A stretch of 64,000 nt of DNA, from positions 371,805 through 435,804 of the IMG/VR virus record IMGVR_UViG_3300028840_001395; one strand, given 5' to 3'. The number at the start of each line of letters is the position of its first letter. Within the stretch, counting starts at the first letter, position 1. A program made the position numbers and the translations under genes. The notes below the pieces were generated by a model. The model was not told the origin of the DNA, ran no database searches, and saw nothing but the letters and a program-made list of their open reading frames with translations. Shown here piece after piece: positions 13,954-36,221 of the stretch.

Positions 13954-14811
13954 CTAGACGGGCACGTTCACCGCTTCCTGGGCGAACAACGAAATCGCAC
14001 CGCCGCCGCCAGCACCCCGACCCGCCTGGGCGATGTCGAAGCCCTGCTCCGCGAACCGGATGGAACCGAGCTGACCGACCGTGGGGTCGTTGCCCGTGGC
14101 GAGGAACTCGCCGTAGACCGAGGCGAAGTCGTGAACGTCGGAGATGTTCACGTCGCCGGACTCCATGACCACTCCCGCGTCCTTGGCGAAGGAGGTGCTC
14201 CAGGAGATGAACCAGCACGCCTCGTTCATCGTGATGATGGCGCTGTGGCCCCGGTTGTCGCCCGGCTGACCGCCAGGGTAGTCGCCCTTCTTCGAGTCCG
14301 GGGTGACCTGGGAGAAGCTCACCCGCTTCACGCCACCATCGAAGGCCCCGCTCACGCCCGCCAAGCCCTGGTTCGGGACACCCAGATCCACGTCAGCCAA
14401 CGTCGAGAACACGAGCTGCTGCTCGATGTCGAACGGCCAGCGGTGGTGCTTCAGGGAGCGCACCGGCCCATCCACGCCCGCTGCGTAGCCCGTGGCCTGC
14501 CACAGGTTGCAGAGGTAGAGCAGCGCCCGCTCGAAGGAGCCGCTCATGGGCTCCGTGACGCCAGGCACCAGCTCGGCCACCTGGTCACCGAAGCCGATGC
14601 CACGGACGGGCTCGACGGCACGGGACTCGGACGGGTTGAAGGTCGAGATGACACCCATCTGATGGAGGGCCTTGACCTCTCCGTAGTGGGGCGTCAGCAG
14701 ACGCACCTTCTGGGACACCGCAGTACGGGTGTTCGGGGTCGTCCCGAAGTCGTACATGTAGGAGGTGCCACCGACACCCGACTGGGGGTTGAGGTCGAGA
14801 TTCTTCGCCAT
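13954..14811 (-). CDS. Tail tube protein
   Basis: 285 aa, beta-rich (MGVISTFNPSESRAVEPVRGIG...ELVPG...PFDIEQ, ACWFISWSTSF). Strong SD (GGAGGAGG), own late promoter motif, upstream of chaperones and tape measure. Confidence 0.7.
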   Translation of the reverse strand: MAKNLDLNPQSGVGGTSYMYDFGTTPNTRTAVSQKVRLLTPHYGEVKALHQMGVISTFNPSESRAVEPVRGIGFGDQVAELVPGVTEPMSGSFERALLYLCNLWQATGYAAGVDGPVRSLKHHRWPFDIEQQLVFSTLADVDLGVPNQGLAGVSGAFDGGVKRVSFSQVTPDSKKGDYPGGQPGDNRGHSAIITMNEACWFISWSTSFAKDAGVVMESGDVNISDVHDFASVYGEFLATGNDPTVGQLGSIRFAEQGFDIAQAGRGAGGGGAISLFAQEAVNVPV

Positions 14812-14861
14812 CGTAGTCCTCCTCCGCTCGCGGAGAGTAGTCCTCTATCACCTACTGTCGG

Positions 14862-14876
14862 ATTATAGGCTCATTA
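14862..14876 (-). promoter_or_regulatory. Putative late promoter motif TAA-N5-CTATAAT
   Basis: One of 7 copies of TAR-N5-CTATM. Upstream of the tail tube gene. Confidence 0.55.
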
Positions 14877-14966
14877 TTCGGGAGCGTTCTTCTCCCATAG
14901 GTCGTTGAACTCACTCTGGAACTCCTCAACGATGTATTTGAGTCGGAGAACAACGAAGTTCTCGGC
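14874..14966 (-). pseudogene. Orphaned second copy of the 3' end of the PLD gene
   Basis: Translates AENFVVLRLKYIVEEFQSEFNDLWEKNAPE*, versus the intact PLD C-terminus AENFVVIRLKYVIQEFQEEFEALWELNAP*. Confidence 0.85.
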
Positions 14967-14973
14967 GTCCTTC

Positions 14974-15003
14974 TTGACACCCAACACGAATTTAGTGTAG
15001 GAT
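14974..15003 (+). promoter_or_regulatory. Sigma70-like promoter of the HNH gene (probably leaderless mRNA)
   Basis: TTGACA-N18-TAGGAT, ending 6 nt before ATG 15010. Confidence 0.55.
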
Positions 15004-15009
15004 AGAGGC

Positions 15010-15702
15010 ATGGATGAAGCAACCTTCTGGGATACGACCATCAGGGAACCCAATGGCTGTTGGTTGTGGGCCGGAGCTGTGGCCAGGGATTATGGGGTGG
15101 TGCAGTTCAAGAAAAAGGCGTGGCGTGCCCATCGCCTGGCCTGGACTCTCGCCAACAAAAGACCTATCCCAGAAGGTCTTTATATCCTCCATACCTGCGA
15201 TGAACCCCTGTGCATCCGGCCCGATCATCTCTACGCCGGAACACAGTCTGACAATATGAAGGACGCCTATGCCAGAGGCCGGTGGGTTCGGAAAGGACAG
15301 CCTGGTGGGGAAGCCCATGCGATGGCCAAGCTCACAGAGAATGATGTAGAAGTAATCAGAAAGAGGCTCCTTGCAGGCGAGTCTCAGGCTCGGCTGGCCC
15401 TTGAATATGGGGTCACCCAGTCCAACATTTCCTGTATCGCAAGGGGGGTGTCCTGGCAGCATCTAAAATTGGAGCCCCTCCCCACCCGATGTGGAAGTGC
15501 GAAACCCGGAGCCAAGCTCACAGAAAAAGACATCCCTCTCATCCTCAAACGGATTCAAGACGGGGACTCGATTTCCCGTGTGGCCCACGACTTCAAAGTG
15601 GGGCGGACTCTCATATCTGATATCTGGCATGGGAAAAAGTGGAAACACATCCCACGTCCTCAAGGAGCATTCAACTCCCAGAGTGCCTCAAACTCCTCCT
15701 GA
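15010..15702 (+). mobile_element. Free-standing HNH homing endonuclease with two C-terminal HTH-like repeats
   Basis: CWLWAG...YG...AHRLAW...ILHTCDEPLCIRPDHL..GTQSDN motif. Two AKLTE.D repeats. Lower GC, opposite strand to neighbours. Confidence 0.9.
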
Positions 15703-16103
15703 AACTCCTGGATCACGTACTTCAATCGGATGACCACGAAGTTTTCTGCATTCCTCTGATCCGCGTTCTTCGTCCAGTTGAATGACCCCGTAGCTACTGC
15801 ACTTGCATCACCAATAACAAACTTATGATGGAGCGAACCGGACTGGTTATCCCGGCGGACAGGGATGCCCACCGCCTCCATCTTCTCGTCGTCCGCCCAC
15901 TTCATCCCGGCCTGGGACTTGTCCATCAAGACCCTGACACGGACCCCTCTCTGGTGGGCCTCGATGAGAGCCTGGGCGATGTCGTCGTGGGTGATGGAGT
16001 AGACGGCGGCGTCAATGAAAGTGTCACACCGCTTGATGAAGCCGATGACCTGTTCTGCCGCACCGCGTCGAGGAGAGAAGTAGACGCTGGCGTATCTTCC
16101 CAT
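15660..16103 (-). CDS. Single-domain phospholipase D family nuclease (Nuc/Zucchini-like)
   Basis: VYFSP, HHKFVIGD (HxKxxxxD), TGSFNWT and NAEN motifs. Confidence 0.9.
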   Translation of the reverse strand: MGRYASVYFSPRRGAAEQVIGFIKRCDTFIDAAVYSITHDDIAQALIEAHQRGVRVRVLMDKSQAGMKWADDEKMEAVGIPVRRDNQSGSLHHKFVIGDASAVATGSFNWTKNADQRNAENFVVIRLKYVIQEFQEEFEALWELNAP

Positions 16104-16138
16104 GTGACCTCCCTACAGAGAGGGAGGCCAAAGGAGAA

Positions 16139-18805
16139 CTACCGGGAGGTGCCCACCGAGATGACCATCTGCCAGCCCTCGTCCGCCGGGGTGTTGCCCG
16201 CGACGATGGACGTGGCCTTGACCAGGTAGTCGTGGGTCATCATGTAGGGCTTGATCTGCCGGTTCTCGATGAGGGTGATGACCCCAGCCAGGATGTCCTC
16301 GTTCTCGGCGTCCTTGTGGGCCTCCAGGAAGGCCACCATCCGGGTCAGGTGCATGTCGTAGGCCGACGTGTCCTTCTCGATGGACACCTTCAGCACCTCG
16401 ATGGCCAGGAGCGCCGTCAGGGTGATGCGGGTCTCGGTGTCGTCGGCGTCCAGGCCACCGTCGTCCCGCAGGTTGGCCAGGACGGTCACGAGGTCCGCGC
16501 CCGGCGGGATGGTGAGGTTGCACATCTCCTCGCTCAAGGAGTCCACGATCTCGCCGCAGGGGTTGTTGGAGTCGAGGAAGAAGCAGGCGTCCTGCACCAT
16601 GTCCGAACCATCGCTGGCGCTGGGGCCGCTGTCGTTGCAGCAGAGGGTCACGTTCTCGGAGATGGGCGTGATGCCCTTGGTGGTGCTGCCACCGCTGCTG
16701 GAGCCGAACACCGGGCTGTCCAGGCTGTCGTGCATCAGCGCCCGGCGCACGCGGGCACCCTTCTTCCGCTTGGCCGACCGGCGACCGCTCATGGACGCCC
16801 CGACCACCTGGTTCGTGTACACGCCCGGCATGGACGTGAATCCACCCCCGCCTGCGCTGGCGCAGATGTTCAGGCTCCGCATCCCGAGCGTCGGCTGACC
16901 GAACACGCCCGCCGCCTGCATGTTCTCAGGCGTCCCCACAGCGACGATCTTCTGCTCGGGCTGCTCACCCGCCTGGTCACCCAGACGCTTCACGACCGCA
17001 CAGAGGCTCATCACCCGGCTGGCCAGGCTGTAGGCCGTCGAAATCTCCTTGAGGTCACGCTCGATGGCCGACTTGGCAGGCCCATCCTGCCCGCACATGT
17101 CCAGGGAGGACTCCAGATCCTCGATCTGCCGCCCAGCCCACAGGAGAGCCACCAGGCCGTTGGGGGTCTCGTGACCCAGCGCGGGCTTGATGACCTTCTT
17201 GCCGCCGTCCCACTTGAGCGTGACCTGGACGGGCAGGAGCTTGCCCTTGCTGCCGTCGTCCGTGATGAGGATGGTCCGACCGTCCCAGATGGTGCCCACG
17301 GTGTGCTCCTGCTTCTTCTTGCCGCCCTTGAGCTTGACCGTGGCCTCCACGTCCGTCTGGACGGGCTGACGCACCGCGTTGAACATGTCGAGAGCGGTGG
17401 TGGCCACGTCCTCGTTGACGCCGACCATCTTGGAGACACCACCCGACCGGCGACCCAGCGCCTCCAGGAAGCGGTCCTGGCTGGCAGCCCCGATGCCCAT
17501 GACGTGGACGCGGGTGCCCGCAGCGGCGACCTGCTCGACAATGGGGCCGGTCTGATACACGGCCCCGTCCGTGATGAGGAAGATGTCCCCACCCGGACCG
17601 CCCAGCACATCCACGCCCGCCCCGAGACCCTCGGCCAGATGGGTGCCGCCACGGGCATCGATCCCAGCGAGCCACTTGCGGGCCTGCTTGCGGTTGGCGT
17701 CCGTGGCCTTGCCCATCTTCTTGTCGAACTTCTCGATGCTGGAGTCGAAGGCCACCAGGCCGAAGTAGTCCTGGGGCTGGAGCGCGGAGATGCACGCCTC
17801 ACAGGCGAGCTTAGCCCGCTCCATCGTGACGCCACCCATCGAACCGGAACGGTCCACCACGAAGCACACCCGGCGCGGCTCGTCCTTGGCCTTGGGAACC
17901 AGGGAGGAGGGCAGCGCGAGGGTCCAGCGGGGGGCCTTCTCGGGGATGGCCGGGTCGTCCTTGTCGGTGGTCTTGGAGACAAGCTCCTCGTCCGCGAACA
18001 TCGTCGGAGTGGCCTCCTGGGTCTTCACATCCACCACGAGGTCGCGGTTCGGCACGTCGGCGCTCCCCGCCAACTCGATCTCCGCCGCCCCATCCTTGAG
18101 GGGGCGCACCAGAACCCGATGCGAAGGCGAGGCCACGGAATCCAGGACTCCGCCGGTCTCGACCCGGATCTTGAAGCTGACCTGGTGCAACCCGTCCGGC
18201 ACGTTCTTCCACTCGGGCAGGATGAGATCCCCGAAGATGTCGGAGGGAAGCTCCATCTTGCCGCCCGCCTCGGTCGCGGTGGCGTTGCCCTTGGCGTGGT
18301 AGCTCGGGGCCAGCGTGAAGGGGAAGCGGAGCCGGAACTTCTCGTCCTCGACATCCACGCCCTGCACGATGTCCAGCATGACCGTGACCATCTCACCGGG
18401 GCGCACCTGACCCACAGAGAGCGTCACCATGCCGTCGTTGTAGGTCTCCGCGAGCACGGAGAGGTGTCCTTCGCTGACGCCCTCCTCGTACTCCTCACGG
18501 GCCTCCTGGCGGGGCGAGAGGGTGGACTCCATCTCGAAGTCCTCGCCCTTGACGATGAAACGCCGGAGCGTGCCCGCGCGCGGGAGCATGAAGGTGTACA
18601 GGGCCTCCATCGGGTTCTCGCCCTCGGCCTTGAAGGCATGGGTCACCCGCAGCAAGGCCCCGGCGGGACTGGCCCTCCCGGACAGGTGAAGCCGCTGCAT
18701 GGCCAGGGCAATCTCTTCCCCTGTGGCGGCGTTGGTCAGGACATTCCCCTGGGGGGTTGTGTCCAGGGCTGTCGCCCCATCGAATCGAGTCGTCCAGCTA
18801 GGCAT
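16139..18805 (-). CDS. VIT + von Willebrand factor A domain protein
   Basis: Start at MPSWTTR (18805), overlapping the MerR stop. VIT domain (EALYTFMLP, AREEYEE, SVGQVRPG). vWA MIDAS DRSGSM, GGT, LITDG. Confidence 0.85.
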   Translation of the reverse strand: MPSWTTRFDGATALDTTPQGNVLTNAATGEEIALAMQRLHLSGRASPAGALLRVTHAFKAEGENPMEALYTFMLPRAGTLRRFIVKGEDFEMESTLSPRQEAREEYEEGVSEGHLSVLAETYNDGMVTLSVGQVRPGEMVTVMLDIVQGVDVEDEKFRLRFPFTLAPSYHAKGNATATEAGGKMELPSDIFGDLILPEWKNVPDGLHQVSFKIRVETGGVLDSVASPSHRVLVRPLKDGAAEIELAGSADVPNRDLVVDVKTQEATPTMFADEELVSKTTDKDDPAIPEKAPRWTLALPSSLVPKAKDEPRRVCFVVDRSGSMGGVTMERAKLACEACISALQPQDYFGLVAFDSSIEKFDKKMGKATDANRKQARKWLAGIDARGGTHLAEGLGAGVDVLGGPGGDIFLITDGAVYQTGPIVEQVAAAGTRVHVMGIGAASQDRFLEALGRRSGGVSKMVGVNEDVATTALDMFNAVRQPVQTDVEATVKLKGGKKKQEHTVGTIWDGRTILITDDGSKGKLLPVQVTLKWDGGKKVIKPALGHETPNGLVALLWAGRQIEDLESSLDMCGQDGPAKSAIERDLKEISTAYSLASRVMSLCAVVKRLGDQAGEQPEQKIVAVGTPENMQAAGVFGQPTLGMRSLNICASAGGGGFTSMPGVYTNQVVGASMSGRRSAKRKKGARVRRALMHDSLDSPVFGSSSGGSTTKGITPISENVTLCCNDSGPSASDGSDMVQDACFFLDSNNPCGEIVDSLSEEMCNLTIPPGADLVTVLANLRDDGGLDADDTETRITLTALLAIEVLKVSIEKDTSAYDMHLTRMVAFLEAHKDAENEDILAGVITLIENRQIKPYMMTHDYLVKATSIVAGNTPADEGWQMVISVGTSR

Positions 18806-19193
18806 CTTCGTCCTCCCTCTCCTCCACATCTGTCGTGGTCTGTACGGCCCTGGCGAACGTCTCCAGGGCGCGAAAAACGATGCGCTTCCGATGGGGCGGG
18901 AGTGAGTTGTCCACACGAACCTCCACTCCCTTGGTTACCCCGAACACCTGATGGATGGATCCCTTGAGCGTCAGGGGGCGCTCCATCAGGTCGTTCTTGA
19001 TCTGGTCGAGGGTCATTCCCTCCGCCTGAAGCTCCTTGATGCGCTTGATGATGGTGAGGTGGTCTTCGGTGTAGGGGGCACCTGGCCCCTGACGAACCGG
19101 GCCGGGCAGGAGCTTGCTGGTCACATAGTAGCGAATCGTGCGAGCCGGAACCCCCGACTGCTCCGCGAGTTCCTTCATCGTGAGTGTCTTCAT
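18798..19193 (-). CDS. MerR-family HTH regulator
   Basis: MKELAEQSGVPARTIRYY..KLLPGP...YTEDHL...IKELQAEGMTLDQIK. Confidence 0.9.
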   Translation of the reverse strand: MKTLTMKELAEQSGVPARTIRYYVTSKLLPGPVRQGPGAPYTEDHLTIIKRIKELQAEGMTLDQIKNDLMERPLTLKGSIHQVFGVTKGVEVRVDNSLPPHRKRIVFRALETFARAVQTTTDVEEREDEDA

Positions 19194-35938: not shown

Positions 35939-36221
35939 ACCACCGCATTCGCCCTCTGCCACGCTTCCCCCGCTTCAGCGCCCGCTCGGCCTTCTGTGCC
36001 TCCGACTGGCCCTTGTACGGGCCGTAGAGGGCACGAGGCACCCACGGACGATGCTTGGAAGTCCAACGGCCTCCTCCGACCAACTCACCGTTGTGCTGGC
36101 GGATGCGTCGGGGAGGTTCTGTGGTGCAGCCGACGTAGAAGAAGCCGGGTCGTCCGCCAGGCCGAATCACCTCGGATTGGATGACATAGACCCACCAGAG
36201 CTTGCTAGACTTGCGCCTCAT
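35853..36221 (-). CDS. GIY-YIG nuclease, SLX1-like
   Basis: Start MRRKSS (36221). WVYVI...FYVGCT..P.RRIRQHNGELVGG..WT..HRPW...AE.ALK. Confidence 0.85.
   Translation of the reverse strand: MRRKSSKLWWVYVIQSEVIRPGGRPGFFYVGCTTEPPRRIRQHNGELVGGGRWTSKHRPWVPRALYGPYKGQSEAQKAERALKRGKRGRGRMRWSTRDSHWCRGLGPAHPWVSDPSCMPEIE

What the first reader, a model, noticed from the sequence alone, without database searches (positions are those of the whole stretch)
14874..16103. HNH homing endonuclease cassette that replaced the 3' end of its PLD target gene
The last 30 codons of PLD exist twice. One copy is on the intact gene (15660 onward, overlapping the HNH 3' end antisense); the other is a diverged orphan at 14874-14966 on the far side of the HNH. 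The intact gene's 3' part (about 15660-15850, including the HKD motif) has visibly more A/T third positions than its 5' half. Inference: the endonuclease cassette brought a recoded, cleavage-resistant gene end (intronless homing). The old end may persist because its stop codon is part of the tail tube promoter motif.
Basis: partly seen in the sequence, partly recalled or inferred. Interest (0 to 1): 0.65.

Follow-up and report, generated by a model that had tools for sequence, protein, structure and literature searches.

The report
Homing endonuclease that swaps gene ends
In a 436-kb jumbo phage, a selfish HNH endonuclease gene sits inside a PLD-type nuclease gene without breaking it, because it brought its own replacement copy of the gene's end and left the original end stranded next door. 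This is a phage counterpart of a trick described so far in fungal mitochondria and yeast.

Summary
The window lies in a 435.8-kb phage genome with terminal repeats. PLD (15660-16103, minus strand) is a mosaic. Codons 1-90 are 89% nt identical to the HNH-free relative L099, but codons 91-147 are only 68% identical, with saturated synonymous divergence. The orphan (14874-14975) matches L099's functional gene end (30/33 aa). So the orphan is the native end, and the working end arrived with the HNH gene (15010-15702).

Eight HNH-free loci carry a single copy. Three further HNH-bearing lineages (L098, L017, L108) each carry an orphan that resembles HNH-free alleles. A second lineage (P0124) has an almost identical cassette (C-part 98%, HNH 95%) joined to a diverged 5' part (81%) at the same junction, and its HNH-free partner P0125 has the native-type end.

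The junction lies at the catalytic HKD motif. The HKD-to-GSFNW stretch has lowered GC3 in all six HNH-linked alleles and in none of the five HNH-free ones.

Cleavage itself is untested. The promoter idea explains only the last few bases of the orphan. The closest analogues are fungal mitochondrial mORFs and yeast WHO elements, so this is a new variant of a known kind.

The parts
15836..16103 (-). Native 5' part of PLD (codons 1-89/90)
   Evidence: 89% nt and 93% aa identical to HNH-free L099, with pS 0.30, like the flanking genes
15660..15835 (-). Foreign 3' part of PLD, from the HKD motif to the stop; part of the cassette
   Evidence: 68% nt and 70% aa identical to L099, pS 0.78. It is 98% aa identical to P0124, whose N-part is only 81% identical. 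dN/dS against L098 is 0.09
15774..15830 (-). Wobble-recoded stretch HxK..GSFNW (codons 92-110); candidate recognition/cleavage region
   Evidence: GC3 is 6/19 here against 74/91 upstream (p 4e-5). GC3 is lowered in 6/6 HNH-linked alleles and 0/5 HNH-free ones. The segment just after GDG is missing from every orphan
15010..15702 (+). HNH_3 endonuclease with two HTH modules (230 aa), convergent with PLD and overlapping it by 43 nt
   Evidence: Pfam HNH_3 4.5e-10 and phrog_59 4e-34. The catalytic motif is conserved in 7 homologues. dN/dS is 0.07 against L098
15639..15655 (-). Terminator-like hairpin just after the PLD stop, inside the cassette
   Evidence: Consensus scan only; 6-bp stem followed by a T-run
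14974..15003 (+). Sigma-70-like promoter (TTGACA-18-TAGGAT) ending 6 nt before the HNH ATG
   Evidence: It is the only such site in 14700-16250. The same geometry occurs in L098, L104 and L017. Function is inferred
14976..14993 (-). Scrap of the native HKD motif (K-F-x-V-G), now the spacer of the HNH promoter
   Evidence: The motif and DNA resemble HKD codons. Equivalent scraps sit next to the HNH start in L098, L017, L104 and L108
14874..14975 (-). Orphan: displaced native PLD tail (33 codons + TAA)
   Evidence: 30/33 aa identical to L099's functional end (E 9e-19), against 66% to the intact end in cis
14812..14873 (-). Intergenic region with the phage promoter-like motif (CCTATAAT at 14862-14869) for the downstream gene
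   Evidence: The motif is conserved upstream of this gene in most of the roughly 80 relatives and precedes many ORFs in the genome. The spacing to the PLD/orphan stop is the same as in HNH-free L099
13954..14811 (-). Conserved 285-aa structural gene (tail-tube-like lead only); right-hand homology flank
   Evidence: 125 relatives in viral contigs. No Pfam or PHROG hit. Atlas feature hit to Phi812_tail_tube clusters at 0.95. The AF2 model failed

Best explanation
This is a gene-end-replacing homing element. A cassette of about 0.84 kb (roughly 14976/14994 to 15835) holds two things. One is an HNH_3-HTH endonuclease gene with its own host-type promoter. The other, convergent with it and overlapping tail-to-tail, is a foreign copy of the PLD 3' part that begins at the catalytic HKD motif.

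The cassette entered a phage whose PLD looked like that of L099. The new end was fused in frame to the native 5' part, so PLD stays intact and under purifying selection. The native end was pushed downstream, lost its HKD-proximal middle, and survives as a 33-codon orphan abutting the promoter of the next gene. These steps are shown by comparison with relatives.

The following steps are inferred. During co-infection the HNH enzyme cuts HNH-free PLD alleles in or next to the HKD-GSFNW coding stretch. The break is repaired from the HNH-bearing genome, using the PLD 5' part and the orphan or downstream gene as homology arms, which copies in the cassette. The cassette's own PLD end escapes cutting because its wobble positions differ across that stretch.
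For: Mosaic gene: against HNH-free L099, nt identity is 89% in codons 1-90 and 68% in codons 91-147 (p 2e-7), and pS is 0.30 against 0.78.

The orphan is the native end: 30/33 aa identical to L099's end, in the same position 62 nt upstream of the next gene.

Copy number tracks the HNH: HNH-free loci have one copy, while the HNH-bearing loci L098, L017 and L108 have a second. Each of those second copies is closest to an HNH-free allele (L099 94%, L024 83%, L041 74%) rather than to the intact end in cis.

Cassette mobility: N-parts group as {window, L098, L099} and {P0124, P0125}. C-parts group as {window, L098, P0124} and {L099, P0125}. The switch lies between residues 86 and 100.

Association: HNH homologues of 51-95% identity are tail-to-tail with a PLD end in 6 loci, one of them in a different gene neighbourhood.

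Recoding: GC3 of HxK..NW is below that of the N-part in 6/6 HNH-linked alleles and 0/5 HNH-free ones.

The HNH gene is intact and constrained. No intron or other RNA family is present.
Against: No cleavage data exist, and the target site is inferred from junctions and deletions only. Free-standing phage endonucleases often cut far from their own gene (PMC2988022), so the true cut site may lie elsewhere.

HNH-linked C-parts from distant lineages do not form a tight clade, so the donors are unsampled. Low GC3 could partly reflect a lower-GC donor rather than selection for escape. HNH synonymous divergence between the window and L098 (0.55) is no lower than in the flanks, so that pair fits vertical descent and gives no evidence of recent homing. 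A related HNH (L107) sits at a different site without PLD.
Confidence: 0.78

Rival explanations
1. Ordinary recombination between diverged phages replaced the PLD end. The HNH gene is a passive neighbour that does not cut PLD.
For: No cleavage evidence exists. Jumbo-phage relatives are highly mosaic around this locus: PLD and the HTH genes are variably present.
Against: The junction is at the same motif in at least four lineages. PLD end and HNH are always tail-to-tail, even in a different neighbourhood (L106). In P0124 the cassette is more conserved than the flanks. Plain homologous exchange would not leave a displaced native end.
Confidence: 0.14
2. A local tandem duplication of the PLD end arose in situ, the copies diverged, and the HNH gene inserted between them later.
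For: The two copies are direct repeats flanking the HNH gene.
Against: The orphan is about 91-94% aa identical to the working end of HNH-free relatives. The working copy here is saturated at synonymous sites against those relatives (pS 0.78, against 0.30 in the same gene's 5' part). Copies of equal age could not differ like that.
Confidence: 0.02
3. The polarity is reversed: the intact end is native and the orphan was imported with the HNH gene.
For: None beyond symmetry of the repeat.
Against: HNH-free partners of both lineages (L099, P0125) carry the orphan-type end as their functional end. The orphan sits at the native distance from the next gene.
Confidence: 0.02
4. The layout is an assembly chimera of two strains.
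For: The data are metagenomic.
Against: The same layout is found in separate assemblies from other samples (L098; the Logan contig with P0001 and P0124). The identical PLD protein is on 5 contigs, the longest 437,927 bases.
Confidence: 0.01

Closest known systems
WHO elements of Torulaspora yeasts (bioRxiv 10.64898/2026.08.13.744650)
   Same: The element is an endonuclease gene plus an alternative 3' part of the host gene. Integration replaces the 3' part and leaves the old 3' fragment downstream. The two gene halves have different phylogenies, and the target region diversifies. Older, decayed endonuclease copies lie further from the gene, compare the nuclease-less HTH genes in L017 and L108.
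   Different: WHO endonucleases are LAGLIDADG + zinc finger, relatives of HO, in a eukaryotic nuclear genome, and the host gene is FBA1. Here the enzyme is HNH_3 + HTH, it is antisense and overlaps the gene end, the host gene is a PLD nuclease, and the genome is a phage.
Fungal mitochondrial mobile ORFs carrying foreign gene C-termini (Allomyces atp6; Glomus atp6/atp9/cox2/nad3; PMC3630166, PMC6279837)
   Same: There is an inserted foreign C-terminus, an endonuclease ORF, and a native C*-terminus left downstream. The native remnant matches the close relative and the inserted end does not.
   Different: Those are LAGLIDADG or GIY-YIG ORFs, usually on the same strand and often in frame with the host gene, in organelle genomes.
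Intronless homing of free-standing endonucleases in T-even phages (SegF, SegG, MobE; PMC2988022, PMC2790892)
   Same: It is a free-standing phage endonuclease between genes. Repair co-converts flanking sequence, so the endonuclease-linked allele replaces the sensitive one.
   Different: In the passages read, no displaced duplicate of the target gene's end is described. Here the cassette carries the gene end, and the old end persists.
Nuc / Zucchini (MitoPLD) single-HKD nucleases (PDB 1byr, 4ggj)
   Same: The host gene is a 147-aa single-HKD PLD-family protein (E 2e-17 to 3e-20), with HKD and GSxN motifs intact in the chimera.
   Different: Its role in the phage is unknown. The gene is absent from many relatives.

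Membership tests
Free-standing HNH (HNH_3) homing endonuclease | HNH/beta-beta-alpha-Me nuclease domain with conserved catalytic residues | tested here: met
   PF13392 4.5e-10 and phrog_59 4e-34. The HRLAW..LHxCD..C..HL..N motif is invariant in 7 homologues
Free-standing HNH (HNH_3) homing endonuclease | Presence/absence polymorphism at one site among close relatives | tested here: met
   Window, L098 and P0124 have it; L099-L102 and P0125 do not
Free-standing HNH (HNH_3) homing endonuclease | Element phylogeny discordant with flanks (horizontal spread) | tested here: met
   Window against P0124: N-part 81%, C-part 98% (p 0.0015), HNH 95%
Free-standing HNH (HNH_3) homing endonuclease | Site-specific cleavage of the endonuclease-free allele, with the own allele resistant | not testable with these tools
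   There is only indirect evidence: the junction position, wobble recoding, and segments deleted from orphans
Gene-end-replacing homing element (WHO / mORF type) | The functional 3' part of the host gene is foreign and linked to the endonuclease gene | tested here: met
Gene-end-replacing homing element (WHO / mORF type) | The native 3' fragment is retained downstream and matches element-free relatives | tested here: met
Gene-end-replacing homing element (WHO / mORF type) | LAGLIDADG (WHO) or LAGLIDADG/GIY-YIG (mORF) endonuclease homologous to those families | tested here: not met
   The enzyme is HNH_3, so this works like those elements but is not a member by descent
Group I/II intron or intein | Ribozyme or in-frame intein interrupting the host gene | tested here: not met
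   There is no Rfam match at E <= 1. The PLD ORF is continuous and the HNH gene is on the opposite strand
PLD superfamily, Nuc/Zucchini type | HxK(x)4D motif plus GSxN, single-domain size | tested here: met
   PLDc_2 5e-28, and PDB 1byr and 4ggj hits. H92, K94, D99, G106, S107 and N109 are invariant

The most novel reading that the evidence does not exclude
Jumbo phages host a family of HNH elements that work like yeast WHO elements. Each carries a replacement end for a PLD nuclease gene, starting at the catalytic HKD codons. An arms race is fought at wobble positions of that motif. Successive invasions leave nuclease-less HTH relics and stranded gene ends. A scrap of the old catalytic motif has been recruited as the promoter of a leaderless endonuclease mRNA. 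A further possibility is that the stranded end is still read as a 45-codon ORF (15011-14874): its window-L098 changes are 4 synonymous to 1 non-synonymous, apart from the codon at the deletion junction.
Probability: 0.45. Interest if true: 0.72.

Novelty: new variant of a known kind. Interest (0 to 1): 0.62.

Why it matters
It shows that the 'bring your own gene end' way of invading a coding gene without breaking it also operates in bacteriophages, using an unrelated endonuclease family. This route needs no intron and no intein, and has been described for fungal mitochondria and yeast nuclei.

It gives a natural matched set for mapping an HNH_3 target and its escape code: sensitive alleles, resistant alleles, orphans, and two lineage pairs. 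It also warns annotators that short gene-end duplicates beside phage HNH genes are footprints of homing, and that such genes are chimeras with two histories.

Tried and rejected
- The phage GenBank collection gave only two remote hits.
- A pattern scan of viral contigs with the HNH protein returned only distant HNH genes.
- A PDB sequence search with the HNH protein found nothing.
- A genome-wide self-tblastx timed out.
- Flank-against-flank tblastx at the other three nuclease genes of the genome (a second HNH_3, an HNH, a GIY-YIG) gave only compositional noise and no gene-end duplicate.
- AF2 of the 285-aa downstream protein failed (pLDDT 28), so 'tail tube' stays a lead.
- DNA of the Logan contigs for P0001/P0124, P0125 and P0002 was not available, so those comparisons are at protein level only.
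- A clade of all HNH-linked C-parts was looked for and not found among distant lineages.
- In L104 and L106 only short HKD scraps are seen, below BLAST significance.

Full report
**Setting.** The window is the last 64 kb of a 435,804-base virus record with direct terminal repeats, that is, a jumbo phage. Around the finding, all on the minus strand except the HNH gene, the order is:
- a 925-aa VIT/VWA protein (16139-18916);
- PLD (15660-16103, 147 aa, PLDc_2 E 5e-28, Nuc/Zucchini type);
- an HNH_3 + HTH ORF on the plus strand (15010-15702, 230 aa);
- the orphan;
- a conserved 285-aa structural gene (13954-14811).

**Observation.** PLD and HNH overlap tail-to-tail by 43 nt. The orphan (14874-14975) repeats the last 31-33 PLD codons in one open frame: 66% aa and 68% nt identity, tblastn E 4e-13, and no hit in 20 shuffles. 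GC3 along PLD is about 0.8-1.0 through codon 85. It drops to 6/19 across HxK..NW (15774-15830) and returns to about 0.7 in the tail. The HNH gene has 0.60 and the neighbouring genes 0.77-0.90.

**Relatives without the HNH gene.** A word search with PLD found an 84%-identical protein, P0123. Its contigs (L099-L102) read VWA, PLD, 62 nt, then the 285-aa gene, with no HNH.
- Against L099, the window's PLD is 89% nt identical in codons 1-90 and 68% in codons 91-147 (Fisher p 2e-7).
- Synonymous difference is 0.30 in the 5' part, like the flanking gene (0.27), but 0.78, i.e. saturated, in the 3' part.
- Sliding identity breaks at about 15836-15850, just before the Leu-His-His-Lys codons.
- L099's functional end is 30/33 aa identical to the window's orphan (E 9e-19) and lies at the same distance from the next gene.

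So the orphan is the native end in its original place, and the working end is foreign. Eight HNH-free loci (L099-L102, L036, L041, L022, L024) contain a single PLD end.

**Independent occurrences.**
- L098 (PLD 93%, HNH 92% identical) has the same layout and the same orphan.
- More distant HNH homologues (51-60% identical) are also tail-to-tail with a PLD end, overlapping by 11-46 nt, in L104, L106, L017 and L108. L106 lies in a different gene neighbourhood.
- L017 and L108 carry significant orphans. These are closest to HNH-free alleles of other phages (L024 83%, E 4e-6; L041 74%, E 1.5e-5), not to the intact end beside them.
- L104 and L106 keep only scraps.

**Mobility.** P0124 shares a 1.2-kb contig with P0001, an HNH 95% identical to the window's. 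Its PLD is 81% identical to the window's in residues 1-90 and 98% in residues 91-147 (p 0.0015). All but one of the differences lie at or before residue 86.

P0125 is 88% identical to P0124 in the N-part. It has the native-type end and no HNH: PLD, then 61 nt, then the next gene.
- N-parts group as {window, L098, L099} and {P0124, P0125}.
- C-parts group as {window, L098, P0124} and {L099, P0125}.

One cassette has therefore entered the same codon position in two lineages. This is the expected signature of homing.

**Anatomy of the junctions.** In every HNH-bearing locus, a scrap of the HKD motif (K-F-x-x-G, and in L108 also the His) lies next to the HNH start. The segment that follows GDG (the AVxTGSFNW codons) is missing from all the orphans. 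The left edge of that gap agrees within about two codons in four lineages, while the right edge varies.

The HKD-GSFNW stretch of the intact gene has GC3 below that of its own N-part in 6/6 HNH-linked alleles and in 0/5 HNH-free ones. I read this as follows. The recognition or cleavage region lies in or just after the HKD codons. The cassette's copy differs there at wobble positions, and the displaced copy has lost it. A lower-GC donor is an alternative reading of the GC3 signal. None of this replaces a cleavage assay.

**The endonuclease.** The catalytic HNH_3 motif is invariant in seven homologues, and dN/dS against L098 is 0.07. The chimeric PLD end has dN/dS 0.09 and keeps H92, K94, D99, G106, S107 and N109.

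The only sigma-70-like site in 14700-16250 is TTGACA-18-TAGGAT at 14974-15003. It ends 6 nt before the HNH ATG. The same geometry recurs in L098, L104 and L017, which suggests a leaderless, host-polymerase transcript. The -35 box lies at the orphan's deletion junction, and the HKD scrap forms the spacer. This is a consensus match, not evidence of function. No RNA family, and hence no intron, is detected.

**The promoter idea.** A motif of the form TAG-n5-CTATA precedes the 285-aa gene in most of the roughly 80 relatives examined. In this genome, CCTATA is depleted overall (33 seen against 112 expected). Even so, 32% of CTATA sites precede an RBS plus ORF, against 13% of random positions.

The orphan's TAA (14874-14876) aligns with the TAG element, and the HNH-free L099 has the same arrangement. 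So the overlap is real and predates the invasion, but it constrains only a few bases.

Why 33 codons persist is open. Between the window and L098, the orphan tail shows 4 synonymous changes and 1 non-synonymous change, plus changes in the junction codon. That could mean recent or repeated capture of functional ends, or residual coding. A 45-codon frame runs from the palindromic CATG at the HNH start, 15011-14874. The counts are too small to decide.

**Comparison with known systems.** The nearest descriptions are two:
- fungal mitochondrial mobile ORFs that insert a foreign C-terminus and leave a native C*-terminus (Allomyces atp6; Glomus atp6, atp9, cox2 and nad3; PMC3630166; also PMC6279837);
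- yeast WHO elements, each made of an endonuclease gene and an alternative 3' half of FBA1 (bioRxiv 10.64898/2026.08.13.744650).

T-even 'intronless homing' gives the phage mechanism of co-conversion (PMC2988022). The passages of that review that I read do not describe a retained displaced gene end. Here the enzyme family (HNH_3), the antisense overlapping layout and the host gene all differ, so this works like those elements but is not a member by descent. My literature search was limited to open-access full text, so an earlier phage report cannot be excluded.

**Verdict.** The historical reconstruction (foreign end plus native orphan, and a mobile cassette) is close to certain. HNH-driven homing with a target at the HKD region is the best-supported mechanism, at about 0.7 on its own, but it is untested.

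Noticed in passing
L015:3158-3541, L017:5516-5890, L018:5438-5896, L020:5425-5871, L022:5519-5992, L023:5508-6011, L024:5522-5926, L108:2-283: Many relatives have a 125-150-aa two-HTH gene, antisense, in the slot just upstream of the 285-aa gene. It aligns with the C-terminal half of the HNH protein and shares its ..VWE end with L104's HNH. These look like nuclease-less relics, or domesticated derivatives, of the same endonuclease family. In L017 and L108 a full HNH cassette sits beside such a relic, like the clusters of WHO elements.
   Followed up: partly
window 14974-15003 (+): A sigma-70-like promoter ends 6 nt before the HNH ATG. The geometry is conserved in L098, L104 and L017. This hints at a leaderless transcript made by the host polymerase, whereas neighbouring genes carry a phage-type CTATA motif.
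   Followed up: partly
window 14862-14876 (-); genome-wide: A promoter-like motif TAG-n5-CTATA occurs upstream of many ORFs. CCTATA is about 3-fold depleted in the genome overall.
   Followed up: partly
L108:345-381: A perfect 16-nt-arm palindrome with a 5-nt loop, built from the orphan's HKD scrap (C-V-G-D-G codons), lies about 20 nt upstream of the HNH start. It could be a repair scar, an operator or a hairpin.
   Followed up: no
window 14874-15011 (-): An open 45-codon frame runs from the palindromic CATG shared with the HNH start through the orphan. L098 keeps it open despite a 3-nt indel. Changes in the orphan tail are mostly synonymous (4 to 1).
   Followed up: partly
L107:4001-4654: An HNH 61% identical to L108's PLD-linked enzyme sits at a different site, beside the MerR and VWA genes, with no PLD nearby. 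The family appears to have changed target at least once.
   Followed up: no
window 35961-36197 (-); genome C1:149749-150012 and C1:107629-107766: The genome has three other nuclease genes of homing types (GIY-YIG, a second HNH_3, HNH). None shows a flanking gene-end duplicate.
   Followed up: yes
window 15639-15655 (-): A terminator-like hairpin with a T-run lies directly after the PLD stop, inside the HNH coding sequence. If real, the cassette supplies the terminator of the chimeric gene.
   Followed up: no
relatives L003-L082: PLD itself is absent from most relatives, where VWA is followed directly by the 285-aa gene. The host gene of the element is therefore itself accessory in this phage group.
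   Followed up: partly
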